Origin: Eukaryota sp. TZLM1-RC
Lineage: Eukaryota; Protista; Metamonada: BaSk clade
NCBI GenBank assembly: GCA_040285825.1
Contig: JAUPSS010000010.1
Location: 1,052,881-1,116,880, forward strand
Direction: 5' to 3'
DNA: 64,000 bases
Position 1 is the first letter of the stretch. Each line of letters begins with the position of its first letter. Under the pieces are notes generated by a model. It saw only the letters and a program-made list of their open reading frames with translations, had not been told where the DNA came from and searched no databases. The translations under genes were made by a program, and so were the position numbers. Shown in pieces: positions 537 to 57,899 of the stretch.

Positions 537-1240
537 TGCGGTTGTAAATCACAATTTGGAAAGGAATTTGGATAAACACTCAAAACAGCTTGACAGAATT
601 TGCCCAATTGAAACACCCCAACATTTAACTCGGTCAGTACAAACCCACAGCACTAACCAATAAGTAATTGATAATATTCATCAGGCTTGATCAAGGAATA
701 AAGTCCCAAAAGTAATACTATGTTTTAACATTTTTCTGATTAAAGTAAAATGCTTGTTTCTATATGCACCAAATTTGAACCAATGACAAAATGACTAATG
801 TCAAAAATTCAAACACGTTGAGAACAATTTCAGAATACAATCTATCGGACACTGTCAATATCCATTTCAGTATCCACTCCCAGTCTATTTGGTTCACTTC
901 ACCCGTGACGTGATCTACCTCTTCATTGAAGCTGAAGATCATGAAAGTCAAAATCATACGTGATGATAGTAAACGTATGTTTTGAGGAGAGAAAATGTGA
1001 AAAACCAATAGAGTTGGAGTCCCATTTTATTCTCTTCAAAAATACTTTATTGTTAACAACTAGTCAACTCAGCTATGCATTGGCATTGAGTTATTCACCA
1101 AAATAGGCGAAATAGTAAAGATTAGAGATGGGCCTTCTCTTCCTTATTTGACCAAGATCCATCAAAAATGACACGTAAGCATGACGAAAAACCCATTAAA
1201 TATTTTGTTTCATCATTCATTATATCATCTTCATCTTGCA

Positions 1241-3283
1241 ATGTCTCACCTAGAATGCGGAATATGCCTTCAGATCATGGAGCAACCGACTACGCTCCCT
1301 TGTGGTCATAGCTTCTGTCGTGATCGATGTCTGTTGCCCTCAAAGAAGCATAACTCCACCTGTCCTCAATGCCGCGAGGAGATTCCATCAATGTCTCACC
1401 GTATCAATATTACTCTGCGAGATATCATTGAATCCTCCTCTCAACACTCTCCCGAACCTCAACTCTGTAAAGGATGCGAAGATGCTCCTGCCACCCTCTT
1501 CTGCTCTGATTGCGATTCTTCTCTTTGCAAGAACTGTTCTGACCATGCACATATTCTCAAGATGTTCCAATCCCATAACATCGTACCCCTCTCCGAACGT
1601 TCCAATGTCTCCTTGCCAAAATGCCCTCACCATAAGGCTAAACAAATCGAGCATTATTGCACCAAGTGCAAGGTTGCTCTATGCGATTCATGTGGCTTGC
1701 TCCAAGGCCACTCACTCCACCATGAAGCTCTTGTTTCTTTTTCACAAGCCAAGGAAGCCTTCACAAAGCAAATTGAAGAGTTTCAGGCCAGAGCTTCTAC
1801 TATTACCCCCTTAGTAGTTCAATCCGGGGATAAAGTAGAATCTGTCGTAAGGGAAACCCTCAATCAATCCCAATCAATTCTTCATGATTTGATTGGTGAT
1901 TTGATTAGACAGTCAGGCACCAAACTTCAGCAGTTGGAATCATCAAATACTGTTGAAGAATCACTTGCTTTTGATGGTGCTGCCAAGGAAAGAGCTCAAG
2001 AAGAGATTCAAAAGATTTATAATGTAGTTGATCAATTTAAAACTACTTTATTTTCTTGTTTTGATAATTTAGAATCTGAAACTATTGGTTTTAAGCTATC
2101 TTTATTAGGTAAATTACTTGGCAAGGAGTTGATTGATGTTGACAAGCTGAATATTTCAAAGACAGCTCAAGAACTTGTCTTTGCTGCCCAAATTGGTCAA
2201 GATTGTGTCCCTTCAAGAGATGAAATTGATGAATTTATTCCTCTTGAAATTGATTTGGAATTAAAACAAATATTAATTATCAATTTTATTAATAATTCAA
2301 AATCAATTAATGTTTCAGATTTTATTTGGCTCTTTAACCTTGAATCTAATTTAGTTTCCCATATTGATTCTCATTTAGTTATTTCTAAATTGGAATTTGG
2401 TAGGTTTTCCAATCAAGAATTTATCAATATTGTTAATTTTGCAATTCAACAATCTAATTCTTTGTTATTAAGCAAGGTTATTGATAATTATTCATTTCAA
2501 TTAGTTCCAGAATTACCAACTATTCCAATTAATTTATTATCAAACATCACTTTAACAAATTCTTTAAATAAAAGAAAAGAAGAATGGTTGGAGAAGGTAA
2601 TTAAAAAGAATTGTTCAAGAGACAATATTGGTGAAATTTCCAGAAATTTATTAGGGAGGGAATTGATGACCAAAATTAGTGTTGGGGTTTGGGCTTACTC
2701 AAATCACATAAACGACCTAACCACCAAGCTTAATAAAGGTTTAACTGAAAATTGGGGGGATTTAGAAGTTGTTATTAATTCATGTGGTAACGACATCAAC
2801 AATTACAAACAACTTGAACCTTTTGATGTGGTGGTGTTGTCTCCTGCCGATGTCCCTTGTCCCGGCCAATACCTAAACCAGCTGTTAGAAGCCGGTAAGG
2901 GTTTGGTATTGTTCAACTGGGGTCCATCATCAAGCCCCCAAGGGTTCAATTACTCTTGCTTTAGTGGGGGTGGTATTTATAACCTTGGATCACAACAAAA
3001 CATTGTTAAAACAAAGTCAAATGACCCAATATTCACAAATGTCAACTCTTTTGCTGTTCCTTATGCTCGTAAAGATGCCCAACTTGTCAATGGAACCTTG
3101 TTGGCAAGTGTGTCTAATGGAAGTCCTTTAATTGCAAAGAATGAAATAGGACAAGGTAGAATTGTGGAGTTTGGTTGTGGTAATTGGAGTAGTGATATTA
3201 ATAGTGGTGATGGCTGGCAAAGCTCAACTGATGGTCACAGGTTGTTTGCCAATTCTATTGCATGGGCTAGTAAAGGGATTTAG
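1241..3283 (+). CDS. TRIM-like protein copy 1: RING + two B-boxes + coiled coil + C-terminal class I glutamine amidotransferase-like (ThuA/DUF4350-type) domain
   Basis: RING CGIC..LPCGHSFC..C..CPQC; B-box1 CKGC..CSDC..LC..C..H..H; B-box2 CPHH..YCTKC..LC..C..H..H. C-terminal FDVVVL / LLEAGKGLVL / PLIAKNEIGQGRIVEFG / LFANSIxW. Start placed at MSHLEC, the first Met common to all four copies. Confidence 0.85.
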   Translation: MSHLECGICLQIMEQPTTLPCGHSFCRDRCLLPSKKHNSTCPQCREEIPSMSHRINITLRDIIESSSQHSPEPQLCKGCEDAPATLFCSDCDSSLCKNCSDHAHILKMFQSHNIVPLSERSNVSLPKCPHHKAKQIEHYCTKCKVALCDSCGLLQGHSLHHEALVSFSQAKEAFTKQIEEFQARASTITPLVVQSGDKVESVVRETLNQSQSILHDLIGDLIRQSGTKLQQLESSNTVEESLAFDGAAKERAQEEIQKIYNVVDQFKTTLFSCFDNLESETIGFKLSLLGKLLGKELIDVDKLNISKTAQELVFAAQIGQDCVPSRDEIDEFIPLEIDLELKQILIINFINNSKSINVSDFIWLFNLESNLVSHIDSHLVISKLEFGRFSNQEFINIVNFAIQQSNSLLLSKVIDNYSFQLVPELPTIPINLLSNITLTNSLNKRKEEWLEKVIKKNCSRDNIGEISRNLLGRELMTKISVGVWAYSNHINDLTTKLNKGLTENWGDLEVVINSCGNDINNYKQLEPFDVVVLSPADVPCPGQYLNQLLEAGKGLVLFNWGPSSSPQGFNYSCFSGGGIYNLGSQQNIVKTKSNDPIFTNVNSFAVPYARKDAQLVNGTLLASVSNGSPLIAKNEIGQGRIVEFGCGNWSSDINSGDGWQSSTDGHRLFANSIAWASKGI

Positions 3284-3291
3284 TTTGTAAA

Positions 3292-6200
3292 TAAATTGGT
3301 TTTTGTGGAGTATTTCAAACATTTTCAATTTCTTTCTTTCCGCTAGCAGGTGATCAGATCTTTGAGTCGATCAGCAAGTCCTCTTTGATTGGGGATGTCA
3401 ATGTATTCAGTGGTCGGCACGATGAGTATTATTTGACTAGGTATCAATAGATGAAAGTGAATGTGGAAACTTTTAACAACTATAAATGTTGCTTAATGAC
3501 GCGTGGTGTTTTTCTTGTAGATACCTTGTGTTAGCACAGAATTTTTGAGTGGTACTGCCCTGCATTGTGTATTTTTAAAATACAAAATTTATTAATTTTA
3601 AAAGCGAAGCAATAAAGACACTCAGAAAGTTGTGGTTAATGTGAAAATGAATTTATTGTCTACTTTAACTCAAGAAGTCAAAGATCCCAATAATCAAGGA
3701 ACCGCAGATAAACTCAAAAACCTACATCCATTTTAAGATCCACTACCAGATCGAAATTAATATGGAAATTATTGGGAATGCCATTCATTGATTACATCAG
3801 AAGGTTTTTTGGCAATCAAAAATTCCACGAGGAAGGTCTGTAAGTCTTTCTGGTTTTTCTTTAGATCATATCAAAGCTGCGGTAATTTCGTTTGAAGATT
3901 GTTTAATATTACAAGCAATTTCTCAATAATTTTATCTGGCCAGCTCAAATACCCTGAAGAATTATGATGTTCGCATTTCACTGCTCTTGTCAAAAATTCA
4001 AAAAAGAATGTTCGTCTAATTGCAGTTTCTGAAGGTTTGAGCAAAATGTTCAGCTTACTCTTTGAATAGATTCAAAGAAAAAGAAAACAAATTTTGTTGC
4101 CGTTCCAACACGGAATCAATACCACTGATGAAATTGCTTCAGCAGTGTTTGCTACAGATGTGTTATTTCATCAAAGTGAATCCAATGTTTGTATGTTGTT
4201 GGATTTTTGTAATGTCTTTAATTCAATTCATCGTTGCAGTATTCATGGTGCTTTGCTCAATTACTTGCCGGAATTGTTGCCATATTTTCGTACATCTTTC
4301 AGCATAAATTCGAATTTGCATTTTGCTGATTCTATTTTGAAATCATCATGGGGTGTTAAGCAAGGAGCCCTGTTGTTTTGTCTGGCCATTCATCCAAGTT
4401 GATCACATATTCAAGCAATGCTTTTTTCCTTAAAAATGATTATTATACGGATGATGTTCTTTTTAAATTGGTTTTTGTGGTGTATTTCAAACATTGTCAA
4501 TATCTTTCTTTCCGCTAGCAGTTGATCAGCAAGTCCTCTTTGATTGGAGATGTCAAGGCATTCAGTGGTCGGCACGATGAGTATTATTTGACTAGGTATC
4601 AATAGATGAAAATGAATGTGGAAACTTTCAACAACTATAATTGTTGCTTAATGACGCGTGGTGTTCTTCTTGTAGTTACCTTGTGTTAACACAGCATTTT
4701 TGTGTGGTGCTGCCCTGCATTTTTTAACTTTTAAAAAAATTATTAATTTCAAAAACGAAGCAATAAAGACACTTAGAAAGTTGTGGTAAATGTGAAAATG
4801 AATATATTGTCTATTTTAAATCCAGGAGTCAAAGATCCCAATAATCAAGACACCGCAGATAAACTCAAAAACCTACATCCATTTGAAGACCCACTGCCAG
4901 ATCGAAATTATTATGGAAATTATTGGGAATGCCATTCATTGATTACATCAGAAGGTTTTTTGGCAATCAAAAATTCCACGAGGAAGGTCTGTAAGTCTTT
5001 CTGGTTTTTCTTTAGATCATATCAAAGCTGCGGTAATTTCGTTTGAAGATTGTTTAATATTACAAGCAATTTCTCAATAATTTTATCTGGCCAGCTCAAA
5101 TACCCTGAAGAATTATGATGTTCGCATTTCACTGCTCTTGTCAAAAATTCAAAAAAGAATGTTCGTCTAATTGCAGTTTCTGAAGGTTTGAGCAAAATGT
5201 TCAGCTTACTCTTTGAATAGATTCAAAGAAAAGGAAATCAAATTTTGTTGCCGTTCCAACACGGAATCAATACCACTGATGAAATTGCTTCAGCAGTGTT
5301 TGCTACAGATGTGTTATTTCATCAAAGTGAATCCAATGTTTGCATGTTGTTGGATTTTTGTAATGTCTTTAATTCAATTCATCGTTGCAGTATTCATGGT
5401 GCTTTACTCAATTACTTGCCGGAATTGTTGCCATATTTTCGTACATCTTTCAGCATAAATTCGAATTTGCATTTTGCTGATTCTATTTTGAAATCATCAT
5501 GGGGTGTTAAGCAAGGAGCTCTGTTGTTTTGTCTGGCCATTCATCCAAGTTGATCACATATTCAAGCAATGCTTTTTTCCTTAAAAATGATTATTATACG
5601 GATGATGTTCTTTTTAAATTGGTTTTTGTGGTGTATTTCAAACATTGTCAATATCTTTCTTTCCGCTAGCAGTTGATCAGCAAGTCCTCTTTGATTGGAG
5701 ATGTCAAGGCATTCAGTGGTCGGCACGATGAGTATTATTTGACTAGGTATCAATAGATGAAAATGAATGTGGAAACTTTCAACAACTATAATTGTTGCTT
5801 AATGACGCGTGGTGTTCTTCTTGTAGTTACCTTGTGTTAACACAGCATTTTTGTGTGGTGCTGCCCTGCATTTTTTAACTTTTAAAAAAATTATTAATTT
5901 CAAAAACGAAGCAATAAAGACACTTAGAAAGTTGTGGTAAATGTGAAAATGAATATATTGTCTATTTTAAATCCAGGAGTCAAAGATCCCAATAATCAAG
6001 ACACCGCAGATAAACTCAAAAACCTACACCCATTTGAAGACCCACTGCCAGATCGAAATTATTATGGAAATTATTGGAAAAGCCATCCATTGGTTGCATC
6101 AGAAGTTGTTTTGGTAATCAAAGATTCCACGTGGAAGGTCTGCAAGTCTTTCTGGTCTTTCTTTAGATCAAATCAAAGCTGCAGTAATTTCGTTAGAAGA

Positions 6201-6632
6201 TAATTTGTTTAATTTTATAAGCAATTTTTTAATAGTTTTATCTGGCCAGCTCAAATACCCTGAAGAAGTAAGATTTCCGCATTTGACTGCACTTGTCTTA
6301 TATTCAAAAAAGAATGTTCGTCTAATTGCAGTTTCTGAAGGTTTGTACAAAATTGTCAGTTTGCTGTTTAAATAGATTCAAAGAAAAAGAAAAAAAGAAT
6401 TTGTTGCCGTTCCAAAACGGAATTTATACCACTGATGGAGTTGCTTCAGCAGTCTCTGCTACAGATATCGTATTTTATCAAATTAATCCAATGTTTGTAT
6501 GTTATTTGATTTTAGTGATGCCTTTGATTCAATTAATCGTTGCAGTATTCATGGTGCTTTGTTCAATTACTTGCCAGAATTGTTTCCATATACTCATACA
6601 TCTTTTAGCACAATTTCAGATTTGAATTTTGT
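3292..6632 (+). repeat. Tandem array (~1.15 kb period; units start at 3292, 4464, 5615) of a degraded CRE-like non-LTR RT fragment
   Basis: ORF pairs are offset by exactly 1151 bp. Broken frames read KLKNLHP, GRSVSLSGFSLDHIKAA, VRLIAVSE, LLPFQHG, LDFCNVFNSI, GVKQG-(deleted)-ALLFCLA and YTDD. Each unit begins TAAATTGGTTTTTGTGG, the same junction that follows the TRIM stop codon. Confidence 0.85.
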
Positions 6633-15070: not shown

Positions 15071-16043
15071 ATATTTTGTTCACTAAAGGCTCTATTCAAA
15101 CCACTTATTTATACCACTAGAATCATTGTCAATTCAGGAGTTCATCCACAGAAACGTCCACATTGGTGAGATAACTGACAACAATATGTGGTGAAATTAA
15201 AATTAAATTTTGCTGATTTTTATTCCTTATTCGATCAAAAATGTGAGTATATGATACATTCTTGGTTATAGTAGTAGAAAACCCTTTGCGTTTGCTTTCA
15301 TAAATGTCCAGTTCTAAACTTGGGACATTGATACATTGTATCTATTGGTCAGCAGAACCAGGCATCTAAACTGCCAGCATTTTTGGTTTTGAAACTTGTC
15401 CCCATTTGTTGCGAAATAATAACTCCATAACTGAAGCTTATTCTTTGAAAAATGGATTTTTGGTGAAATTTTCTTTTCCGTACTACATTCAGTTCCCAAT
15501 TAATAACAAGTTACGGAAAATCTTGAATTGGGTTTAAATTGTAGTAAATAAGCAATACCTTCTGCTAATTCAAAGTAAAATGAGACCAACTTGTGCATTT
15601 ACAAGTGTTATTTCTGACATTGCTGAACTTTTTTTATTGTTATCAAAAATTGGCATAACCTCCTCTTCATTTATTTATTTAATTTGACTCTGAATATTCG
15701 AATTTCCATCGATACAATTTAAAGTTAATAAATAAATAAAAGAATTGTTCTTTCGTCTTTTGACAAGCAGAATAAACAGCTTGTTTGCAAGCTTATCGAA
15801 ATGAACAATGGGTTGGTTGATTAATGTTACAATGATATATTTCAATGACCTATATTGGCTACTGAAAGTGTAAGGTTCAGTTGTTGTTTACAAATCTGTA
15901 AAGGTGGAGTAGGATTTCATCAATGAAGATCATGTCATACTTAAGTGCCATTCATAACATCCGGCTTTCGCTCAAATGCTCATTGATGGTGTAATGCTAA
16001 TATGCCACGTAAGCATGACGAAAAATCTCATCTTCATCTCCCA

Positions 16044-18083
16044 ATGTCTCACTTAGAATGTGGAATATGCCTTCAGATCATGGAGCAACCGACTACGCTA
16101 CCTTGTGGCCATAGCTTCTGTCGTGATCGCTGCCTGTTACCCTCAATGAAGCGTAACTCCACCTGTCCTCAATGCCATGAGGTGATTCCATCGATGTGTC
16201 ATCGTATTAACATCACTCTGCGTGATATTATTGAATCCTTCTCTCAACATTCTCCCGAACCTCAACTCTGCAAAGGATGTGAAGATGCTCCTGCCACCCT
16301 CTTCTGCTCTGATTGCGATTATTCTCTTTGTAACCAATGCTCTGATAAAGCCCACAGTCTCAAGATGTTCCAATCCCACAACATCGTACCCCTCTCCGAA
16401 CGCTCAAATGTCTCCCTACCAAAATGCCCTCACCATAAGGGCAAGCAAATCGAGCATTATTGCACCAAGTGCAAGGTTGCTCTATGCGATTCATGTGGCT
16501 TGCTCCAAGGCCACTCACTCCACCATGAAGCTCTTGTTTCTTTTTCACAAGCCAAGGAAGCCTTCACAAAGCAAATTGAAGAGTTTCAAGCCAAGGCTTC
16601 CACTATTACCCCCTTAGTAGTTCAATCCGCGGATAAAGTAGAATCTGTCGTAAGGGAAACCCTCAATCAATCCCAATCACTTCTTCATGATTTGATTGGT
16701 GATTTGATTAGACAGTCAGGCACCAAACTTCAGCAGTTGGAATCATCAAATACTGTTGAAGAATCACTTGCTTTTGATGGTGCTGCCAAGGAAAGAGCTC
16801 AAGAAGAGATTCAAAAGATTTATAATGTAGTTGATGAATTTAAAACTACTTTATTTTGTTGTTTTGATAATTTGGAATCTGAAACTATTGGTTTTAAGCT
16901 ATCTTTATTAGGTAAATTACTTGGCAAGGAGTTGATTGATGTTGACAAGTTGAATATTTCAAAAAGAGCTCAAGAACTTGTTTTTGCTGCCCAAATTAGT
17001 CAAGACTGTGTCCCTTCAAGAGATGAAATTGATGAATTAATTCCTCTTGAAATTGACTTGGAATTAAAACAAAAATTAATTATCAATTTTATTAATAATT
17101 CAAAATCAATTAATTTTTCAGATTTCATTTGGCTCTTTAACCTTGAATCAAATTTAGTTTCTAATATTGATTTTGATTTAGTTATTTCTAAATTGGAATT
17201 TGGTAGGTTATCCAATCAAGAATTTATCAATATTGTTAATTTTGCAATTCAACAATCTAATTTGTTATTAAGCAAGGTTATTGATAATTATTCATTTGAA
17301 TTGGTTCCAGAATTACCAGCTATTCCAATTAATTTATTATTAAATATTACTTTAACAAATTCTTTAAATAAAAGAAAAGAAGAATGGTTGGAGAAGGTAA
17401 TTAAAAAGAATTGTTCAAGGGACAATATTGGTGAAATTTCCAGAAGTTTATTAGGAAGGGAATTGATGTCCACAAAAATTAGTGTTGGGGTTTGGGTTCA
17501 TTCAGATCACATGAACGACATAACCACCAAGCTTAATAAAGGTTTAACTGAAAATTGGGGGGATTTAGAAGTTGTTATTAATTCAAGTGGTAACGCCATC
17601 AACAATTACAACGAACTTGAACCCTTTGATGTGGTGGTGTTGGATCCTCACCATGTCTCTTGTCCCGGCCAATACCTAAACCAGCTGTTAGAAGCTGGTA
17701 AGGGTTTGGTATTGTTCAACTTTAATCCACAAAAAAGCCCCCAAGGGTTTAATTACTCTTGCTTTAGTGGGGGTAATTATACTAACCTTTATTCACAACA
17801 AAACATTGTTAAAACAAACTCAAATGACCCAGTATTCACAAAAGTCAACTCTTTTGTTGTTCCTCATGCTCGTAAAGATGCCCAACTTGTCAATGGAACC
17901 TTGTTGGCAAGTGTGTCTAATGGAAGTCCTTTGATTGCAAAGAATGAAATAGGACAAGGTAGAATTGTGGAGTTTGGATGTGTTTATTGGAGTAGTGATA
18001 TTGGTGGTCATGGCTGGCAAAGCTCAACTGATGGTCACAGGTTGTTTGCCAATTCTATTGTATGGGCTTGTAAAGGGATTTAG
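16044..18083 (+). CDS. TRIM-like protein copy 2 (no linked RT remnant)
   Basis: Same architecture as copy 1. Similarity ends at TAAATTGGTTTTTGTGG (~18108). Confidence 0.85.
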   Translation: MSHLECGICLQIMEQPTTLPCGHSFCRDRCLLPSMKRNSTCPQCHEVIPSMCHRINITLRDIIESFSQHSPEPQLCKGCEDAPATLFCSDCDYSLCNQCSDKAHSLKMFQSHNIVPLSERSNVSLPKCPHHKGKQIEHYCTKCKVALCDSCGLLQGHSLHHEALVSFSQAKEAFTKQIEEFQAKASTITPLVVQSADKVESVVRETLNQSQSLLHDLIGDLIRQSGTKLQQLESSNTVEESLAFDGAAKERAQEEIQKIYNVVDEFKTTLFCCFDNLESETIGFKLSLLGKLLGKELIDVDKLNISKRAQELVFAAQISQDCVPSRDEIDELIPLEIDLELKQKLIINFINNSKSINFSDFIWLFNLESNLVSNIDFDLVISKLEFGRLSNQEFINIVNFAIQQSNLLLSKVIDNYSFELVPELPAIPINLLLNITLTNSLNKRKEEWLEKVIKKNCSRDNIGEISRSLLGRELMSTKISVGVWVHSDHMNDITTKLNKGLTENWGDLEVVINSSGNAINNYNELEPFDVVVLDPHHVSCPGQYLNQLLEAGKGLVLFNFNPQKSPQGFNYSCFSGGNYTNLYSQQNIVKTNSNDPVFTKVNSFVVPHARKDAQLVNGTLLASVSNGSPLIAKNEIGQGRIVEFGCVYWSSDIGGHGWQSSTDGHRLFANSIVWACKGI

Positions 18084-24050: not shown

Positions 24051-26230
24051 GACCAATTGCTATTGGAGAGTCATTAACCAGATTGCTTTCTTCACTTATT
24101 TTCAACAGAATTTCTACTAAAGCAAGGGACTATTTGAAGCCTTTCCAATTTGGTATAAAAACTGTTGAAGGTGCTTCTGTTGCTTCAATGACTTCAGATG
24201 TTTTTTTCAATAGTCAACAACATCAATATATTTTCAATTTGGATTTCAAAAATGCTTTCAATTCTGTGAAACGTGATTGTATTTTTGATGTGCTTCTTCA
24301 TGATTTTCCTGAACTTTCTGCATATTTTTATTTATTTTATGGAAAAAAATCAGACTTAATTTTTGACTCCTTTACCCTTGAATCTTCTTCTGGTGTGAAA
24401 CAAGGTGATCCTCTTGGCCCTTTGCTGTTTTGTTTGGCTATTCATAATATTATTAAAATGACACAACAAGATTTCCCTGATTTGCGTATTGTTGCCTATA
24501 TGGATGACATTTCTATTATTGGTTCTTTTGAAAGCATTTCTAGGGTTTCTGAAGACATTGCGGCGAAATACAAAGAAATTGGTTTAGCTTTGAACCCATC
24601 TAAATGTCTCTTGATTGGTAGAGAAAAACAATCTTTGATGATTGGTGGAGCTCAGATTCCTTTTATCAATTATGACCAACAAGCTTTTTAAGTTTCTTGG
24701 ATGTTGGCTTGGCAATTTGGATGAAATTTATTCCCAGTTAAACAATTTATTGGAGAAGTTTGACAAGGATCTTAGTTATATCGCTGAATGTGACATTGAG
24801 AAACACATCAAATTTTTTATTTTAAAAATTTGTTATTCTGGAAAATTCACTCATATTTTAAGGTCAACTCCCCTTCGGTATCTCTCAATTTTTGCAGATC
24901 TTTTAACAAACTTCGAGTCAAATTTTTTTCTTCTTTATTAGAAGTAAATGAATCTTTAATTCGAAGTCATGTATTTTGTTCAGCAGATTTGGGTGGAATT
25001 GGATTCACCAAATCTTCGATTCTGTGTAAATCAGCATTTTTGGGAGGTGGTAAAAATTTTGTTTTTGAATTTTTCCAAAGGTTCCCTTTTGATGTTCATC
25101 TGATCAATGGTGAATCAAATTTTTACTTGAATCAACTGCAATTTGAATTAGAAAATTTGCCTAGTGATATCTGGATTCAGTGTTTTCCTCAAAACGTTCA
25201 AGAAATTCCCACTCGATCACTTCCAAATTTACGTTTTTGCTTGAAAAAGCTTCAGCACCATCTGGTTAAATTATATGAAGGCTTGGATTATGAAGTAAGA
25301 CTTGGCTTGGCCAAAACTAAAAATCCCGCTTTCGGTAATTTTTTAAAGGATATTCGTGATAGTTCTGCTGCTGCTTTAGTAACTCAAGTTCCCTCTGTTT
25401 ATGGACTTTTGCTAAAAAGACAATGAATGGCTTTTAAACATGCGTTTTCGTTGTTTTCTGTGGCCAAACAATTTGCCCAATCATTTAACTTGTAAATGTG
25501 GTAAACCTCTTTTGTTTACTCATCTTTTGAACTGTAAACATTTCATTACGTATAGAAGCAAAGTGCATAATAACGTCAGGGACCAAATTTATGTAATGTG
25601 CAAATCATATCGTGTAGATTCCTTTTTAGAACCGCTGTTATCAAAATTAATTCTTGATGATCCCAATATTGATAGTACGCGTTACAACAGAGCTTCTATG
25701 GGTTTGACTAGAGGTGATCTAGTTGTTCCCGGTTTAAATGGTAGTTTTACTATTTTGGACGCCATGTCTATTGACCCTTGTAATTCCTCTAACGAACATT
25801 TCATTAACTCGGATGTAAATAATCCTCTTCTTGCAGGCGAAAAATATAAAATTGCTAAATATGCGAAACCCATTTCCTCGGTTAATGAAAATTCTCATGC
25901 CCAATATAATTTATGTCCATTTGTTTTTTCTTTGCTTGGATCTCTAGGTAAGGCTGCTATGGCTTTCCTTGAGGATTTTGTTGTAGTTGTAAAGGAAAGA
26001 ACTGGAAGAATTTTCAATCGTGTTTACTGGCAAAACAGGATTGTATTTTCTATTTTTAAGGGAATGGTAACACTAATTTCTGATTCACTATCTTCTTTTG
26101 GGAAATTTTCTGAATCTTTAGCGATTAATTGTTTTGATGTAGGGGAGGCAGGTTTTGAGGATGTGGAGTTTTAATTGTGTATTTCATATTTGTTGTTGAA
26201 TAAAAATTTGAATAGTATAAAACAAAAAAA
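24051..26230 (+). mobile_element. 5'-truncated CRE-like non-LTR retrotransposon (RT + CCHC + restriction-like endonuclease), three frameshifts
   Basis: IRPIAIGE, PFQFG, LDFKNAFNSV, GVKQGDPLGPLLF, YMDD, GGIG, CKCG..H..C, VHNNVRD, EP, RGDLVV, D, EKYKIAKY. A-rich tail; ATATCAAATAA at 24040-24050 and 26231-26241 is the likely TSD. Confidence 0.9.
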
Positions 26231-34439: not shown

Positions 34440-35620
34440 TAAATATTATAAACCATACAGTTGCTTACCTGAAAATCGTCAAGTCACCTATAAGAACAAC
34501 ATCATCCGTATAATAATCATTTTTAAGGACGGAAACATTGCTTGAATATGTAATCAAATTGGATGAATGGCCAGACAAAACAAAAGAGCTCCTTGCTTAA
34601 CACTCCTTGATGATTTCAAAATAAAATCAGCAAAAAACAAATCCGAATTTGTGCTGAAAGATGTACGAAAATATGGCAACAATTCCGGCAAGTACTTGAA
34701 CAAAGTACCATGAATACTGCAACGGTGAATTGAATAAAAGGCATTACTAACATGTATTGGATTCAGTTTAATTAAATAAAACATTTGTAGCAAACCCTGC
34801 TGAAGCAATTTCATCAGTGGTATTGATTCCGTGTTGGAACGGAAACAAATTCTTTTAGCTTTTTCTTTGAATCTATTCAAAGAGTAAGCTGAACATTTTG
34901 TGCAAACCTCCAGAAATTGCAATTAGACGAACATTTTTTTGAATTATTGACAAGTGCAGTCAAACGTAAACATCTTAATTCTTCAGGATATTTAAGCTGG
35001 CCAGCTAAAACTGTATTAAAAAACTTGCTTATAAAATTAAACCATCTTCTGAAGAAATTACCGCAGCTTTGATATGATCTGAAGAAAAATCAGAGAGACT
35101 TGTAGACCTTTCACGTGGTGTTTTAGAATTAACCGAACAACTTCTGATGCAATCAATGAATGGCTTTCCCAATAATTTCCATAATAATTTTGATCTGGCT
35201 GTGGGTCTTCAAATGGATGTAGGTTTTGACTTTATCTGCGGTTCCTTAATTATTGAGATCTTTGACTCCTGGATTTGAAATAGACAATATATTCATTTTC
35301 ACATTTACCACAACTTTCTCAGTGTCTTTATTGCTTCGTTTTTAAAATTAAATTTATTATTTTAAAAGTAAAAAATACAGGGCAGTACCACACAAAAATT
35401 CTGTGCTCACACAAGGTAACTAAAAGAAGAACACCACGCGGCATTAAGCAACAATTATAGTTGTTGAAAGTTTCCACAATCATTTTCATCTATTGATACC
35501 TAGTCAAATAATACTTATCGTGCCGACTACTGAATACATTGACATCTCCAATCAAAGAGGACTTGCTAGTGGAGAGAAAGAAATTGAAAATGTTTGAAAT
35601 ACACCACAAAAACCAATTTA
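34440..35620 (-). mobile_element. Degraded CRE-like RT fragment directly downstream of TRIM copy 3
   Basis: Same junction and same KQG-ALLFCLA deletion as 3292-4463. Confidence 0.85.
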
Positions 35621-35628
35621 TTTACAAA

Positions 35629-37668
35629 CTAAATCCCTTTACTAGCCCATACAATAGAATTGGCAAACAACCTATGACCATCAGTTGAGCTTTGCCAACC
35701 AGAACTTCCAATATCACTACTCCAATAAACACATCCAAACTCCACAATTCTACCTTGTCCTATTTCATTCTTTGCAATTAAAGAACTTCCATTAGACACA
35801 CTTGCCAACAAGGTTCCATTGACAAGTTGGGCATCTTTACGAGCCTCACGAACAACAAAAGAGTTGACATTTGTGAATATTGGGTCATTTGACTTTGTTT
35901 TAACCATGTTTTGTTGTGATCCAAATTCAGTCCAAGTACCCCCACTAAAGCAAGAGTAATTAAACCCTTGGGGGCTTCTTTGTGGATACCAGTTGAACAA
36001 TACCAAACCTTTACCAGCTTCTATCAGCTGGTTTAGGTATTGGCCTGGACAAGAGACATGGTAAGGAGACACCACCACCACATCAAAGGGTTCAAGTTCG
36101 TTGTAATTGTTGAAGGCGTTACTACTTGAATTAATAACAACTTCTAAATCTCCCCAATTTTCAGTTAAACCTTTATTAAGAAAGGTGGTTAGATAGTTAA
36201 TGTGACCTGAAAAAACCCAAACCCCAACACTAATTTTGGTCATCAATTCCCTTCCTAATAAATTTCTGGAAATTTCACCAACATTGTCCCTTGAACAATT
36301 CTTTTTAATAACCTTCTCCAACCATTCTTCTTTTCTTTTATTTAAAGAATTTGTTAAAGTAATGTTTGATAATAAATTACTTGGAATAGTTGGTAATTCT
36401 GGAACTAATTCAAATGAATAATTATCAATAACCTTGCTTAATAACAAAGAATTAGAATGTTGAAGTGCAAAATTAACAACATTAATAAATTCTTGATTGG
36501 AAAACCTACCAAATTCCAATTTAGGAATTACTAAATCAGAATCAATATTAGAAACTAAATGAGATTCAAGGTTAAAGAGCCAAATAAAATCTGAAACATT
36601 AATTGATTTTGAATTATTGATAAAATTAATAATTAATTTTTGTTTTAATTCCAAGTCAATTTCAAGAGGAATTAATTCATCAATTTCATCTCTTGAAGGG
36701 ACACAATCTTGACCAATTTGGGCAGCAAAGACAAGTTCTTGAGCTCTTTTTGAAATATTCAGCTTGTCAACATCAATCAACTCCTTGCCAAGTAATTTAC
36801 CTAATAAAGATAGCTTAAAACCAATAGTTTCAGATTCTAAATTATCAAAACAAATAAAAAAAGTAGTTTTAAATTCATTAACTACATTATAAATCTTTTG
36901 AATCTCTTCTTGAGCTCTTTCCTTGGCAGCACCATCAACAGCAAGGGATTCTTCGACAGTATTTGAGGACTCTAACTGGTGAAGTTTGGTGCCTGACTGT
37001 CTAATCAAATCACCAATCAAATCATGAAGAATTGATTGGGATTGATTGAGGGTTTCCCTTACGACAGATTCGACTTTATCCCCTGATTGAGCTACCAAGG
37101 GAATAATAGTGGAAGTATTGGCTTGAAACTCTTCAATTTGCTTTGTGAAGGCTTCCTTGGCTTGAGAAAAGGAAACGAGAGCTTCGTGGTGAAGTGAGTG
37201 GCCTTGGAGCAAGCCACATGAATCGCATAGAGCAACCTTGCACTTGGTGCAATAATGCTCGATTTGCTTACCCTTATGGTGAAGGCATTTTGGTAGGGAG
37301 ACATTTGAGCGTTCGGAGAGGGGTACGATGTTGTGGGATTGGAACATCTTAACAGAATGGACATGGTCAGAACAGTTCTTGCAAAGAGAAGCATCACAGT
37401 CAGAGCAGAAGAGGGTGGCAGGAGCATCTTCGCATCCTTTGCAGAGTTGAGGTTCGGGAGAGTGTTGAGAGGAGGAATCGATGATGTCGCGTAGAGTGAT
37501 GTTAATACGGTGACACATCGATGGAATCTCCTCGCGGCATTGAGGACAGGTGGAGTTATGCTTCTTTGAGGGCAACAGACATCGATCACGACAGAAGCTA
37601 TGACCACAAGGGAGCGTAGTTGGTTGTTCCATGATCTGAAGGCATATTCCGCATTCTAGGTGAGACAT
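35629..37668 (-). CDS. TRIM-like protein copy 3
   Basis: Same architecture; intact ORF from MSHLEC. Confidence 0.85.
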   Translation of the reverse strand: MSHLECGICLQIMEQPTTLPCGHSFCRDRCLLPSKKHNSTCPQCREEIPSMCHRINITLRDIIDSSSQHSPEPQLCKGCEDAPATLFCSDCDASLCKNCSDHVHSVKMFQSHNIVPLSERSNVSLPKCLHHKGKQIEHYCTKCKVALCDSCGLLQGHSLHHEALVSFSQAKEAFTKQIEEFQANTSTIIPLVAQSGDKVESVVRETLNQSQSILHDLIGDLIRQSGTKLHQLESSNTVEESLAVDGAAKERAQEEIQKIYNVVNEFKTTFFICFDNLESETIGFKLSLLGKLLGKELIDVDKLNISKRAQELVFAAQIGQDCVPSRDEIDELIPLEIDLELKQKLIINFINNSKSINVSDFIWLFNLESHLVSNIDSDLVIPKLEFGRFSNQEFINVVNFALQHSNSLLLSKVIDNYSFELVPELPTIPSNLLSNITLTNSLNKRKEEWLEKVIKKNCSRDNVGEISRNLLGRELMTKISVGVWVFSGHINYLTTFLNKGLTENWGDLEVVINSSSNAFNNYNELEPFDVVVVSPYHVSCPGQYLNQLIEAGKGLVLFNWYPQRSPQGFNYSCFSGGTWTEFGSQQNMVKTKSNDPIFTNVNSFVVREARKDAQLVNGTLLASVSNGSSLIAKNEIGQGRIVEFGCVYWSSDIGSSGWQSSTDGHRLFANSIVWASKGI

Positions 37669-37774
37669 TGGGAGATGAAGATGAGATAATGAATGATGAA
37701 ACAAAATATTTCAAGGTTTTGTTGTTATGCTTACGTGTCCAAAGAAATTCCATTTTCTGCAATTCTTAATATTT

Positions 37775-55453: not shown

Positions 55454-55461
55454 TTTACAAA

Positions 55462-57501
55462 CTAAGTCCCTTTACTAGCCCATACAATAGAATTGGCAAA
55501 CAACCTGTGACCATCAGTTGAGCTTTGCCAGCCAGCACTATTAATATCACTACTCCATTCATTACATCCAAACTCCACAATTCTACCTTGTCCTATTTCA
55601 TTCTTTGCAATTAAAGGACTTCCATTAGACACACTTGCCAACAAGGTTCCATTGACAAGTTGGGCATCTTTACGAGCATAAGGAACAGCAAATGAGTTGA
55701 CATTTGTGAATATTGGGTCATTTGACTTTGTTTTAACAATGTTTTGTTGTGATCCAAGGTCAGCCCATTTACCCCCACTAAAGCAAGAGTAATTAAACCC
55801 TTGGGGGCTTTTTGGTGGATAATTGTTGAACAATACCAAACCTTTACCAGCTTCTAACAGCTTGTTTAGGTATTGGCCGGGACAAGATAATAATCGAGGA
55901 CACAAAACCACCACATCAAAGGGTTCAAGTTCGTTGTAATTGTTGATGTCGTTACCACTTGAATTAATAACAACTTCTAAATCCCCCCAATTTTCAGTTA
56001 AACCTTGATTAAGCTTGGTGGGTAGTTCGATAATGAAGCCTGAATCACCCCAAACCCCAACACTAATTTTGGACATCAATTCCCTTCCTAATAAATTTCT
56101 GGAAATTTCACCAATATTGTCCCTTGAACAATTCTTTTTGATAACCTTCTCCAACCATTCTTCTTTTCTTTTATTTAAAGAATTTGTTAAAGTGATATTT
56201 GATAATAAATTACTTGGAATAGTTGGTAATTCTGGAACTAATTCAAATGAATAATTATCAATAACCTTGCCTAATAACAAAGAATTAGAATGTTGAATTG
56301 CAAAATTAAAAACATTGAAAAATTCATGATTGGAAAACCCACCAAATTCCAATTTAGCAATAACTAAATCAAAATCAATATTGGAAACTAAATTAGATTC
56401 AAGGTTAAAGAGCCAAATAAAATCTGAAACATTAATTGATTTTGAATTTTTGACAAAATTGATAATTAATTTTTGTTTTAATTCCGAGTCAATTTCAAGA
56501 GGAATTAATTCATCAATTTCATCTCTTGAAGGGACACAATCTTGACCAATTTGGGCAGCAAAGACAAGTTCTTGAGCTCTTTTTGAAATATTCAGCTTGT
56601 CAACATCAATCAACTGCTTGCCAAGTAATTTAGCTAATAAAGATAGTTTAAAACCAATAGTTTCAGATTCTAAATTATCAAAACAAGTAAATAAACTAGT
56701 TTTAAATTCATCAACTACATTAAAAATCTTTTGAATCTCTTCTTCAGCTCTTTCCTTGGCAGCACCATCAAAAGCAAGTGATTCTTCGACAGTATTTGAG
56801 GATTCCAACTGTTGAAGTTTGGTGCCTGACTGTCTAATCAAATCACCAATCAAATCATGAAGAATTGATTGGGATTGATTGAGGGTTTCCCTTACGACAG
56901 ATTCTACTTTATCCGCGGATTGAACTACCAAGGGGGTAATAGTGGAAGTATTGGCTTGAAACTCTTCAATTTGCTTTGTGAAGGCTTCCTTGGCTTGCGA
57001 AAAAGAAACGAGAGCTTCGTGGTGAAGTGAGTGGCCTTGTAGCAAACCACATGAATCACAGAGAGCAACCTTGCACTTGGTGCAATAATGCTCGATTTGC
57101 TTACCCTTATGGTGAGGGCATTTTGGTAGGGAGACCTTTGAGCGTTCGGAGAGGGGTACGACGTTGTGGGATTGGAATGCTTTCATTGCGTGAACACCAG
57201 CAGAGCATTTCTCACAGAAAGAGAGATCACAGTTAGAGCAGAAGAGGGTGGCAGGAGCTTCTTCGCATCCTTTACAGTGTTGAGGTTCGGGAGAGTGTTG
57301 AGTGGAGGATTCAATGATGTCGCGCAGAGTGATGTTAATACGGTGGCACATGGAAGGAATCTCCTCGCGACACTGAGGACAGGTTGAGTTGTGCTTCTTC
57401 GAGGGCAACAGACATCGATCACGACAGAAGCTATGACCACAAGGGAGCGTGGTTGGTTGCTCCATGATCTGAAGGCATATTCCGCATTCTAGGTGAGACA
57501 T
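55462..57501 (-). CDS. TRIM-like protein copy 4
   Basis: Same architecture; intact ORF from MSHLEC. Confidence 0.85.
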   Translation of the reverse strand: MSHLECGICLQIMEQPTTLPCGHSFCRDRCLLPSKKHNSTCPQCREEIPSMCHRINITLRDIIESSTQHSPEPQHCKGCEEAPATLFCSNCDLSFCEKCSAGVHAMKAFQSHNVVPLSERSKVSLPKCPHHKGKQIEHYCTKCKVALCDSCGLLQGHSLHHEALVSFSQAKEAFTKQIEEFQANTSTITPLVVQSADKVESVVRETLNQSQSILHDLIGDLIRQSGTKLQQLESSNTVEESLAFDGAAKERAEEEIQKIFNVVDEFKTSLFTCFDNLESETIGFKLSLLAKLLGKQLIDVDKLNISKRAQELVFAAQIGQDCVPSRDEIDELIPLEIDSELKQKLIINFVKNSKSINVSDFIWLFNLESNLVSNIDFDLVIAKLEFGGFSNHEFFNVFNFAIQHSNSLLLGKVIDNYSFELVPELPTIPSNLLSNITLTNSLNKRKEEWLEKVIKKNCSRDNIGEISRNLLGRELMSKISVGVWGDSGFIIELPTKLNQGLTENWGDLEVVINSSGNDINNYNELEPFDVVVLCPRLLSCPGQYLNKLLEAGKGLVLFNNYPPKSPQGFNYSCFSGGKWADLGSQQNIVKTKSNDPIFTNVNSFAVPYARKDAQLVNGTLLASVSNGSPLIAKNEIGQGRIVEFGCNEWSSDINSAGWQSSTDGHRLFANSIVWASKGT

Positions 57502-57899
57502 TGGGAAATGAAGATGAGATAATGAATGGTGAAACAAAATATTTGAAGGGTTTTTCGTCATGCTTACGTGTCATTGATGATGGTTCTCTGGTTTTTGCAA
57601 TGCATTCAACAGGTGAAATGAGAACACAAGATGAAAGAATCTTCTTTTATTCAAACCACAGATTATTGTGTACAGATACTGAACAACCTTAGCTTTCCAA
57701 AATCTACATTGTTTTTATATATTTTTATTTATTCCAACAAAAACAAACTATACGACAAGGTTAAAATTCTATGTCTTCATAACCCAAATCAGCCAAGAAC
57801 AATTGACTGGAAGTTTTTCCTGGACTGGAAATCTTTATTCCCTTGTAATAAATTGCATTTAAGGTATACTCAATGTCTAACCCCCACAGATCTTCAAAA

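What the first reader, a model, noticed from the sequence alone, without database searches (positions are those of the whole stretch)
2680..3215. TRIM-like family with discrete hypervariable loops in a GATase-like C-terminal domain
Seen: four intact paralogues are near-identical in the framework but differ in patches following predicted beta-strands. W-AYSNHIND / VHSDHMND / VFSGHINY / GDSGFIIE; SPADVP / DPHHVS / SPYHVS / CPRLLS; WGPSS / FNPQK / WYPQR / NYPPK; GIYNLG / NYTNLY / TWTEFG / KWADLG; GN..INSGD / VY..IGGH / VY..IGSS / NE..INSA. Changes fall mostly at codon positions 1-2, often several per codon. Established: this parallels the variable loops of the TRIM5 PRYSPRY domain under diversifying selection. 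Inference: a protist intracellular recognition system (E3 ligase plus variable sensor) using a fold not typical of TRIMs, perhaps against viruses, retroelements or bacteria.
Basis: partly seen in the sequence, partly recalled or inferred. Interest (0 to 1): 0.85.

Follow-up and report, generated by a model that had tools for sequence, protein, structure and literature searches.

The report
Protist TRIM-like ligases with hypervariable loops
A free-living soda-lake flagellate (Skoliomonas litria) carries a young, clustered family of RING/B-box ubiquitin-ligase genes whose C-terminal domain, a non-catalytic glutamine-amidotransferase-like fold, is being reshaped by strong diversifying selection in a few loops, the same evolutionary pattern as antiviral TRIM5/finTRIM genes of vertebrates but on a different scaffold and in a protist.

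Summary
The window (Skoliomonas litria TZLM1-RC, contig JAUPSS010000010.1) holds four intact ~700-aa paralogues. Each reads RING, B-box1, B-box2, long helices, a helical domain, then a ~200-aa C-terminal domain. That domain models with pLDDT 93.8 as a GATase1-like fold and lacks a conserved Cys-His-Glu triad. Its nearest solved structures are STM3548 and 3rht (Z 19), then ThuA-like proteins.

With seven further copies from the same genome, my own codon site models give:
- N-terminal part: omega 0.18.
- C-terminal domain: omega 0.98 overall, with about 15% of sites at omega about 7.
- LRT 164 (M2a vs M1a) and 178 (M8 vs M7).
- LRT 111-152 whatever tree is used.
- LRT 0-8.5 in seven usable null simulations (an eighth failed numerically), five of them with heavy recombination.

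Selected sites sit just after strands beta1-beta4 and the last strand, which is the ancestral active-site edge. They are enriched in His, Tyr and Trp. The same sites differ between paralogues in a sister species.

The defence reading (an E3 ligase with a variable sensor in a genetic conflict) is plausible but untested. No RNA runs were listed, the target is unknown, and 3D clustering could not be computed. The scan noted a similar TRIM-like pair elsewhere in this genome (s1-644199). I found no paper describing this architecture.

The parts
1181..3283 (+). Copy A, intact 700-aa TRIM-like gene. The public model starts at M33 and cuts off two RING ligands.
1253..1375 (+). RING finger, aa 25-65. 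Its Cys/His ligands are invariant in all 14 family members aligned.
1454..1591 (+). B-box 1, aa 92-137. It holds three candidate positively selected sites (aa 113, 122, 128).
1616..1741 (+). B-box 2, aa ~146-187
   Evidence: second zf-B_box stretch; TRIM3 match to aa 147-241
1739..2119 (+). Long helices, aa ~187-313: putative coiled coil. Modelled with low confidence as a monomer.
2138..2665 (+). Confidently modelled all-helical domain, aa ~320-495. It matches no known family.
2675..3280 (+). GATase1-like (ThuA/DUF7408-like) C-terminal domain, aa 499-700, without a conserved catalytic triad
2696..2707 (+). Variable patch 1 (aa 506-509), directly after strand beta1
2792..2794 (+). Variable site (aa 538), after strand beta2
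2837..2857 (+). Variable patch 3 (aa 553-559), after strand beta3
2918..2932 (+). Variable patch 4 (aa 580-584), after strand beta4. By topology this is where GATases have the nucleophile elbow.
   Evidence: topology is inference
2972..2989 (+). Variable patch 5 (aa 598-603), at the start of a long strand
3062..3064 (+). Variable site aa 628
3179..3211 (+). Variable patch 7 (aa 667-677), in the loop after the last core strand. A weak profile alignment places the catalytic His-Pro-Glu of HisH here.
16002..18083 (+). Copy B, intact, 693 aa (C-terminal domain ~17475-18080)
35629..37704 (-). Copy C, intact, 691 aa (C-terminal domain ~35632-36237)
55462..57561 (-). Copy D, intact, 699 aa (C-terminal domain ~55465-56070)
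3292..6631 (+). Tandem dead reverse-transcriptase fragment downstream of copy A. One unit also follows copies C and D and the L004 copy, so gene plus fragment were duplicated together.

Best explanation
This is a lineage-specific, recently expanded family of TRIM-like proteins in Skoliomonas. Each protein reads RING, B-box1, B-box2, helical or coiled-coil region, helical domain, then a non-catalytic GATase1-like domain.

The conserved N-terminal part most likely works as a RING E3 ubiquitin ligase. The C-terminal domain most likely acts as the target-binding module. Its binding surface would be built from the loops at the C-terminal ends of the core strands, where amidotransferases have their active site. 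These loops are under strong diversifying selection, so each paralogue carries a different combination of loop sequences.

The most likely driver is antagonistic co-evolution with a changing ligand, such as proteins of viruses, retroelements or other selfish elements, or of bacteria met by this bacterivore. A bound target would then be ubiquitinated, as with TRIM5alpha and fish finTRIMs.

Shown here: architecture, fold, absence of a conserved catalytic triad, family expansion, purifying selection on the N-terminus, positive selection on the loops, and recombination among copies. Inferred: ligase activity, binding, the nature of the target, and a defence role.
For: Architecture:
- Pfam finds a RING (aa 25-65) and two B-box stretches.
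- phmmer against the PDB hits TRIM72, TRIM21 and TRIM3.
- Long helices follow B-box2.

Fold:
- The AF2 model has pLDDT 93.8.
- Best structural matches are 2gk3, 3rht and 3soz (Z 19, rmsd 2.3-2.5 over ~187 residues), then ThuA-like (Z 15-17), IFT52-N (Z 15) and true GATases (Z ~13).
- No Cys, His or Glu column is conserved across 46 homologues.

Selection:
- N-terminal part: M0 omega 0.18.
- C-terminal domain: M0 omega 0.98. M2a gives omega 7.2 for 15% of sites, with LRT 164. M8 vs M7 gives LRT 178.
- LRT stays at 111-152 with the domain's own tree, the N-terminal tree or random trees.
- M1a null simulations gave LRT 0 and 0 without recombination, and 0-8.5 in five usable replicates with 4-10 recombinant segments.
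- Tree-free minimum counts in the 29 patch codons: 106 nonsynonymous changes over 69 sites against 11 synonymous over 18 sites.

Other support:
- Patch residues are enriched in His (7.6x), Tyr (4.3x) and Trp (3x).
- The same sites differ in independent paralogue pairs: GEM-RC1 P0010/P0128 (odds ratio 15, p 1e-9) and S. litria P0011/P0012 (odds ratio 6.7, p 7e-6).
- The domain behaves as a modular C-terminal module. In Skoliomonas it is also fused to RING-only, B-box, BTB and kinase N-termini. An ESM Atlas cluster of 75 members, all with a BTB domain and 44% also with BACK, has the same fold (TM 0.83).
- Nine copies are intact, and RING/B-box pN is very low against pS of 0.27-0.5, so these are working genes.
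Against: - There is no expression evidence; no RNA run was listed.
- No ligand or target is known.
- Ligase activity is untested. The spacing between the fifth and sixth RING ligands is three residues rather than the usual two (read from the sequence).
- Spatial clustering of the selected sites could not be computed, because no coordinates are available. It rests on beta-alpha-beta topology and on a non-significant HisH alignment.
- The site models are my own implementation with naive empirical Bayes posteriors, run on 11 recombining paralogues. One of these is frameshifted upstream and one is a chimera.
- Diversifying selection does not by itself show defence.
Confidence: 0.6

Rival explanations
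1. The paralogues partition endogenous substrates. They are housekeeping E3 ligases, and the loops diversified so that each targets a different cellular protein or glycan. No genetic conflict with a parasite is involved.
For: The domain is attached to several regulatory scaffolds (RING, BTB, kinase) in the same genome, which suits a general adaptor role. Neighbouring genes are ordinary housekeeping genes. No virus or target has been identified.
Against: Omega of about 7 at up to eight residues per site among copies with pS of only 0.04-0.15 indicates continuing rapid turnover rather than a few fixed specificities. The same sites vary again in independent pairs and in a sister species.
Confidence: 0.2
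2. The signal is a mutational artefact. Patch-wise micro gene conversion, or mosaic exchange from divergent family members, introduces multi-nucleotide changes that inflate dN/dS without selection for novelty.
For: Recombination among copies is real. Identical runs are longer than in permutations (A-H p<0.0005; A-B p=0.017). pS drops about four-fold after codon 260. A chimera joins a foreign RBCC to this domain. Of differing patch codon pairs, 59% differ at two or more bases.
Against: Neutral import from divergent donors should carry at least as many synonymous as nonsynonymous changes per site, yet the observed nonsynonymous-to-synonymous ratio is at least 2.4. Variable residues are interleaved at single-residue scale with invariant ones, which does not fit conversion tracts. 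Null simulations with heavy recombination gave LRT of 8.5 or less in five usable replicates, against 111-178 observed. No extra template copy of the region lies near the genes.
Confidence: 0.1
3. The loops are simply unconstrained surface loops drifting neutrally (omega about 1).
For: Loops are usually the least constrained parts of a fold. Whole-domain omega is about 1.
Against: M2a fits far better than the nearly-neutral M1a (LRT 164), and M8 fits far better than M7 (LRT 178). Patch nonsynonymous change per site exceeds every synonymous rate measured anywhere in the gene.
Confidence: 0.04
4. The domain is an active glutamine amidotransferase or hydrolase, and the changes tune its catalytic specificity.
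For: The fold belongs to the class I GATase superfamily. The variable loops surround the position of the ancestral active site (inference from topology; one search is weak).
Against: No conserved Cys/His/Glu triad exists in the family or in its 46 aligned homologues. The elbow position itself is hypervariable. The nearest structures are the ThuA-like/GIFT-like branch rather than true GATases.
Confidence: 0.03

Closest known systems
TRIM5alpha / TRIM22 (primates) and finTRIM / bloodthirsty-like TRIMs (teleosts; PMC2657112)
   Same: Both have a RING-B-box-helical N-terminus under purifying selection. Both have a C-terminal sensor domain in which a few surface loops are under strong positive selection. 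Both are multi-copy, clustered, recently duplicated genes.
   Different: The sensor here is a GATase1-like alpha/beta domain, not PRY-SPRY (B30.2). An extra ~175-residue helical domain lies between the helices and the sensor. The host is a free-living metamonad protist. No antiviral activity or target is known.
TRIM37-like 'Subfamily A' TRIMs, the only TRIMs reported outside animals (Marin 2012, PMC3503706)
   Same: The RING-B-box arrangement occurs in non-animal eukaryotes, excavates included.
   Different: Subfamily A carries a MATH domain and is single-copy and conserved. This family has two B-boxes, a GATase1-like domain, and is expanded and fast-evolving. I did not test phylogenetic relatedness of the RBCC parts.
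ThuA-like / DUF7408 / STM3548-type GATase1-like domains of bacteria and archaea (PDB 2gk3, 3rht, 3soz, 1t0b), and the IFT52 N-terminal (GIFT) domain
   Same: Same fold (Z 15-19). Weak Pfam DUF7408 similarity. Shared C-terminal sequence motif.
   Different: The prokaryotic relatives sit in secreted or membrane proteins (Por_Secre_tail, BatA/VWA, PEP-CTERM) or stand alone. None is known as the variable module of an E3 ligase.
Diversity-generating retroelements (DGR)
   Same: Localised hypervariability in a C-terminal ligand-binding domain. A reverse-transcriptase remnant lies next to several copies.
   Different: There is no template repeat near the genes. Variable positions show no adenine bias (T38/A31/G32/C32). 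The RT is a decayed retrotransposon fragment and is absent from some copies.

Membership tests
TRIM / RBCC family | N-terminal RING finger | tested here: met
   Pfam zf-RING_2 1.5e-7 and zf-C3HC4_2 2.4e-7, both above the curated cut-off, at aa 25-65. The ligands are invariant in 14 members.
TRIM / RBCC family | One or two B-boxes directly after the RING | tested here: met
   zf-B_box 1.6e-13 with two stretches (best at aa 92-137). The second lies at about aa 146-187 and matches TRIM3.
TRIM / RBCC family | Coiled coil after the B-boxes that forms an antiparallel dimer | tested here: inconclusive
   AF2 gives three long helices at aa ~187-313, but with low confidence as a monomer. Dimerisation was not established.
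TRIM / RBCC family | C-terminal domain of a described TRIM class (PRY-SPRY, NHL, FN3, MATH, PHD-bromo and others) | tested here: not met
   No such Pfam domain is present. The domain is a GATase1-like fold.
TRIM / RBCC family | E3 ubiquitin ligase activity | not testable with these tools
   Needs an in vitro ubiquitination assay.
Class I glutamine amidotransferases (catalytic) | GATase1 alpha/beta fold | tested here: met
   TrpG, HisH, PabA and GuaA domains match at Z ~13, rmsd ~3 over 165-177 residues.
Class I glutamine amidotransferases (catalytic) | Conserved Cys-His-Glu triad | tested here: not met
   None of the invariant or nearly invariant columns of the 46-sequence alignment is Cys, His or Glu. 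The positions after beta4 and after the last strand are hypervariable.
ThuA-like / DUF7408 GATase1-like domains | Pfam DUF7408 or ThuA match above the gathering score | tested here: not met
   Copy A scores 23.9 bits against a cut-off of 27. Precomputed weak or faint DUF7408 hits exist on some paralogues. A remote homologue, P0027, scores above the cut-off for both DUF7408 and ThuA.
ThuA-like / DUF7408 GATase1-like domains | Structural similarity over the whole domain | tested here: met
   2gk3, 3rht and 3soz at Z 19; 1t0b at Z 16.8. Atlas clusters carrying ThuA, or BatA with DUF7408, match at TM 0.75-0.80.
Positively selected immune-type sensor families (TRIM5 / finTRIM type) | Site class with omega above 1 concentrated in loops of the sensor domain, with the rest under purifying selection | tested here: met
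Positively selected immune-type sensor families (TRIM5 / finTRIM type) | Binding and restriction of a pathogen or mobile element | not testable with these tools
   No target is known and no RNA runs were listed.
Diversity-generating retroelement targets | Nearby template repeat plus adenine-specific substitutions | tested here: not met

The most novel reading that the evidence does not exclude
Skoliomonas runs a TRIM5-like intracellular restriction system that arose independently of animal immune TRIMs. In this reading, a bacterial-type GATase1-like domain, possibly acquired by gene transfer, lost catalysis, and its former active-site crest became a hypervariable, antibody-like binding surface. 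The domain was then coupled to RING, BTB and kinase effectors. The TRIM-like branch is diversified by duplication, exchange between paralogues and positive selection against viruses or against the abundant retroelements and Fanzor elements of this genome.
Probability: 0.35. Interest if true: 0.88.

Novelty: new variant of a known kind. Interest (0 to 1): 0.72.

Why it matters
Immune-type gene families that evolve by duplication plus positive selection on a sensor surface are well described in animals and plants. They are hardly described in free-living protists. According to the one survey I could read (PMC3503706), TRIM-type ligases outside animals are limited to TRIM37-like genes.

This family would show three things:
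- The design of an E3 ligase joined to a hypervariable sensor has arisen on a different scaffold in a deep-branching eukaryote.
- A non-catalytic amidotransferase-like fold can serve as a variable recognition domain.
- Concrete candidate receptors exist with which to look for the still unknown viruses or selfish elements of metamonads.

The GATase1-like domain with seven short variable loops on a rigid, confidently modelled frame is also a possible new binder scaffold.

Tried and rejected
- RNA evidence: the look-up of sequencing runs listed no run, so read laying was not used and expression stays untested.
- Homodimer prediction for aa 145-340 (B-box2 plus helices): no verdict. It is not evidence either way.
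- Profile alignment of the domain family to E. coli HisH: not significant (probability 0.12). The N-terminal half looks out of register, and only the placement of the His-Pro-Glu loop is suggestive.
- Middle helical domain: no Pfam match and no ESM Atlas feature hit. A Foldseek search with the full-length model returned only GATase-like hits.
- DGR-type mutagenesis: rejected. There is no template repeat and no adenine bias.
- Literature: no paper mentions DUF7408. No paper links a ThuA or GATase-like domain to E3 substrate recognition. None describes TRIM-like genes in metamonads. The Skoliomonas genome paper does not mention B-box, RING or ubiquitin.
- Null simulations: the first run exceeded the time limit. 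One replicate of the second failed numerically.
- 3D clustering of selected sites could not be computed, because the tools do not return model coordinates.
Full report
**What is in the window.** ORF listing shows four long ORFs of 691-700 aa: A 1181-3283(+), B 16002-18083(+), C 35629-37704(-) and D 55462-57561(-). They are 88-90% identical in protein. tblastn with copy A finds only these four, with no fragments.

**Organism and family size.** The proteins are annotated hypothetical proteins of 'Eukaryota sp. TZLM1-RC', which is Skoliomonas litria, assembly GCA_040285825.1. This is a bacterivorous anaerobic metamonad from soda lakes (PMC11603281, PMC11316075). The window lies at about 1.053-1.117 Mb of contig JAUPSS010000010.1.
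- Three more copies lie on the same contig at about 0.92-0.97 Mb.
- Single copies lie on contigs 1 and 12.
- Contig 6 carries a frameshifted copy. It also carries a chimera (P0009), in which a quite different RING/B-box N-terminus (37% identity) is joined to this family's C-terminal domain (83% identity).
- More distant members (42-51% identity) exist in S. litria (P0011, P0012) and in Skoliomonas sp. GEM-RC1 (P0010, P0014, P0128).
- Several public gene models start at an internal Met and cut off the first two RING ligands. The ORFs themselves are complete.

**Architecture.** Pfam finds a RING (aa 25-65), two B-box stretches, and a sub-threshold DUF7408 match at aa 601-668. Sequence search of the PDB with aa 1-490 hits TRIM72, TRIM21 and TRIM3, other RING ligases, and Toxoplasma B-box proteins. 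A full-length AF2 model is poor for the zinc fingers because the alignment is shallow. It does give three long helices at aa ~187-313, a confident all-helical domain at aa ~320-495 (pLDDT 85-92), and then the C-terminal domain. The order RING, B-box1, B-box2, helices is that of TRIM/RBCC proteins. Coiled-coil dimerisation was not established.

**The C-terminal domain.** I modelled it with a 46-sequence alignment. It folds with pLDDT 93.8 and pTM 0.91.
- Foldseek and VIA-align place it in the class I glutamine-amidotransferase-like fold.
- Closest are the uncharacterised GATase1-like proteins 2gk3, 3rht and 3soz (Z 19, rmsd 2.3-2.5 over about 187 residues).
- Next come ThuA-like proteins (Z 15-17), the IFT52 N-terminal domain (Z about 15) and true amidotransferases (Z about 13).
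- None of the conserved columns of the 46-sequence alignment is Cys, His or Glu. The positions where the triad would sit are hypervariable. The domain therefore does not meet the catalytic definition of a GATase.

**Relatives of the domain.** An exhaustive profile-free search found 116 representative clusters. Of the ten I looked up among the best-scoring hits, all come from the two Skoliomonas genomes. Six of those ten carry another recognisable N-terminal module, and four have no Pfam match:
- RING only (P0020, P0023)
- B-box (P0015)
- BTB (P0021)
- protein kinase (P0025)

Weaker hits are prokaryotic or metagenomic proteins, for example ThuA/DUF7408 proteins or proteins with a Por secretion tail. 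A shape search of the ESM Atlas also finds a 75-member cluster, all with a BTB domain and 44% also with BACK, that has this fold (TM 0.83). The remaining matches are bacterial BatA/VWA, PEP-CTERM and ThuA families. So the domain is used as a C-terminal module on several ubiquitin-ligase or signalling scaffolds.

**Selection analysis.** Pairwise Nei-Gojobori dN/dS among the four window copies is 0.16-0.27 for residues 21-495. It is 1.07-1.60 for the whole C-terminal domain, with no sites picked out.

I then wrote a Goldman-Yang F3x4 site-model likelihood program and applied it to 11 C-terminal domains, with these results:
- M0 omega 0.98.
- M1a lnL -2612.3 and M2a lnL -2530.1, giving LRT 164 (p 2e-36). 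The positive class has omega 7.2 and holds 15% of sites.
- M8 against M7 gives LRT 178, with omega 7.3 for 14% of sites.
- Using only the nine intact full-length genes, LRT is 111 with the domain's own tree, 145 with the N-terminal tree, and 152 and 135 with two random trees.
- The N-terminal 472 codons give M0 omega 0.18. The positive-selection signal there is modest (LRT 12.9, p 0.0016; three sites in B-box1: aa 113, 122, 128).

**Checks that do not depend on a tree.**
- Minimum numbers of changes were counted as distinct states minus one. In the 29 patch codons they are 106 nonsynonymous over 69 sites and 11 synonymous over 18 sites. In the N-terminal part the ratio is 0.26.
- Up to eight different residues occur at one position among 11 copies.
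- Differences in patches fall 41%/38%/21% on codon positions 1/2/3. In the N-terminus 61% fall on position 3.
- I simulated data under the fitted nearly-neutral model. Without recombination LRT was 0 and 0. With 4 or 10 segments given permuted trees, LRT was 0, 4.3, 3.3, 2.95 and 8.5, and one replicate failed numerically. Recombination alone therefore does not produce a signal of the observed size.

**Recombination.** Exchange among copies is nevertheless real. Two pairs share runs of identical polymorphic sites longer than in permutations (A-H p<0.0005; A-B p=0.017). Synonymous divergence drops from 0.22-0.50 in codons 21-260 to 0.04-0.15 in codons 261-700. The 3' two thirds of the genes is thus younger or is being homogenised, yet the patches within it are the most diverged amino-acid positions of the protein. 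The P0009 chimera shows that the domain can move between genes.

**Where the selected sites are.** In model numbering (protein residue minus 488), sites with posterior above 0.95 are 18, 20, 21, 50, 66, 68, 71, 92, 93, 95, 96, 110-113, 115, 140, 179, 185, 187 and 189. The model's strands are 11-16, 42-47, 62-65, 86-90 and so on to 171-176, with helices between the first four.
- Patches 1-4 lie immediately after beta1, beta2, beta3 and beta4. These strands must be parallel because they are joined by beta-alpha-beta crossovers, so these patches lie on the same edge of the sheet.
- Patch 7 follows the last core strand.
- In amidotransferases this edge carries the nucleophile elbow (after beta4) and the His/Glu loop (after the last strand). 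This rests on established knowledge of the fold. A weak HisH alignment places His-Pro-Glu on patch 7.
- This is inference from topology. I could not compute distances because coordinates are not returned.

Patch residues are enriched in His (7.6x), Tyr (4.3x) and Trp (3x) relative to the framework, a composition typical of binding surfaces.

**Independent replication.** Two other paralogue pairs differ preferentially at the homologous sites:
- GEM-RC1 P0010 vs P0128: 19 of 29 selected sites differ against 19 of 172 others (odds ratio 15, p 1e-9).
- S. litria P0011 vs P0012: odds ratio 6.7, p 7e-6.

**Interpretation.** The evolutionary claim is well supported: this is a clustered TRIM-like family with a conserved ligase part and a sensor domain under strong diversifying selection in discrete loops. 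The functional claim follows by analogy with TRIM5alpha and finTRIMs (PMC2657112, PMC3845644) and from the modular use of the domain on other ligase scaffolds. That claim is an E3 ligase whose variable domain recognises a changing, probably foreign, target. It remains untested, for these reasons:
- No RNA run was listed.
- No target is known.
- Endogenous substrate partitioning remains a live alternative.
- A DGR-like mechanism is rejected.
- Neutral drift is rejected.

**Novelty.** Marin 2012 (PMC3503706) reports only TRIM37-like MATH-domain TRIMs outside animals. My searches found no paper on DUF7408, on GATase-like domains as E3 recognition modules, or on TRIM-like families in metamonads. 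The Skoliomonas genome paper does not mention them. I rate this a new variant of a known kind. The principle is the TRIM5/finTRIM one, while the sensor fold, the extra helical domain and the host lineage are new. The scan's first-stage notes include a similar TRIM-like pair on another piece of this genome (s1-644199). They also suggest that the genes spread together with a dead retrotransposon fragment (s1-643951, s1-644617). I confirmed that copies A, C, D and the L004 copy share about 1.2 kb of that fragment downstream, while B, L001, L002 and L005 do not.

Noticed in passing
window 1241-3280 and the eight other full-length copies (L001-L005): Synonymous divergence among copies steps down about four-fold at about codon 260: pS 0.22-0.50 before it and 0.04-0.15 after it. 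The 3' two thirds is therefore younger or homogenised by gene conversion, while the RING/B-box part is older.
   Followed up: partly
L006:3001-4509 and L006:3-1294: P0009 is a natural chimera. A different RING/B-box N-terminus (37% identity) is fused directly to this family's C-terminal domain (83% identity), without the middle helical domain. Just upstream lies another copy that is frameshifted near aa 308-315 and is annotated as two genes.
   Followed up: partly
window 3292-6631; also 34491-35620, 55094-55461 and L004:5038-6174: A dead reverse-transcriptase fragment of about 1.15 kb follows the stop codon of copies A (tandem, about three units), C, D and the L004 copy in the same orientation. 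This suggests gene and fragment were copied as one unit. Copies B, L001, L002 and L005 lack it.
   Followed up: partly
window 25581-26207, 54105-54731; L005:1893-2520: A 627-bp sequence is repeated at 99.2-99.7% identity in two places of the window and on another contig. In L005 it overlaps a 192-aa gene call. It looks like a very young dispersed element.
   Followed up: no
window 2138-2665 (aa ~320-495 of copy A): A confidently modelled all-helical domain (pLDDT 85-92) lies between the long helices and the GATase1-like domain. It has no Pfam or Atlas match, is conserved among copies, and is absent from the P0009 chimera.
   Followed up: partly
window 1454-1591 (B-box 1): A second, weaker hotspot of amino-acid change lies between the zinc ligands of B-box 1. 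Sites aa 113, 122 and 128 have posterior 0.93-0.99, and the LRT is 12.9.
   Followed up: partly
window 30320-33097 (-) and 52144-53349 (+): A 925-aa ORF was already noted by the scan as LanM-like. A retroviral-type integrase ORF (Integrase_H2C2 plus rve) lies between the TRIM-like copies. The other large ORFs are housekeeping-type (Vps54/syndetin-like, M16 peptidase, GAS, DUF4200).
   Followed up: no
ESM Atlas (row 2): A 75-member cluster of ~500-aa proteins, all with a BTB domain and 44% also with BACK, has a C-terminal domain of the same fold (TM 0.83), with taxa not recorded. The GATase1-like domain may be a wider eukaryotic substrate-adaptor module.
   Followed up: no
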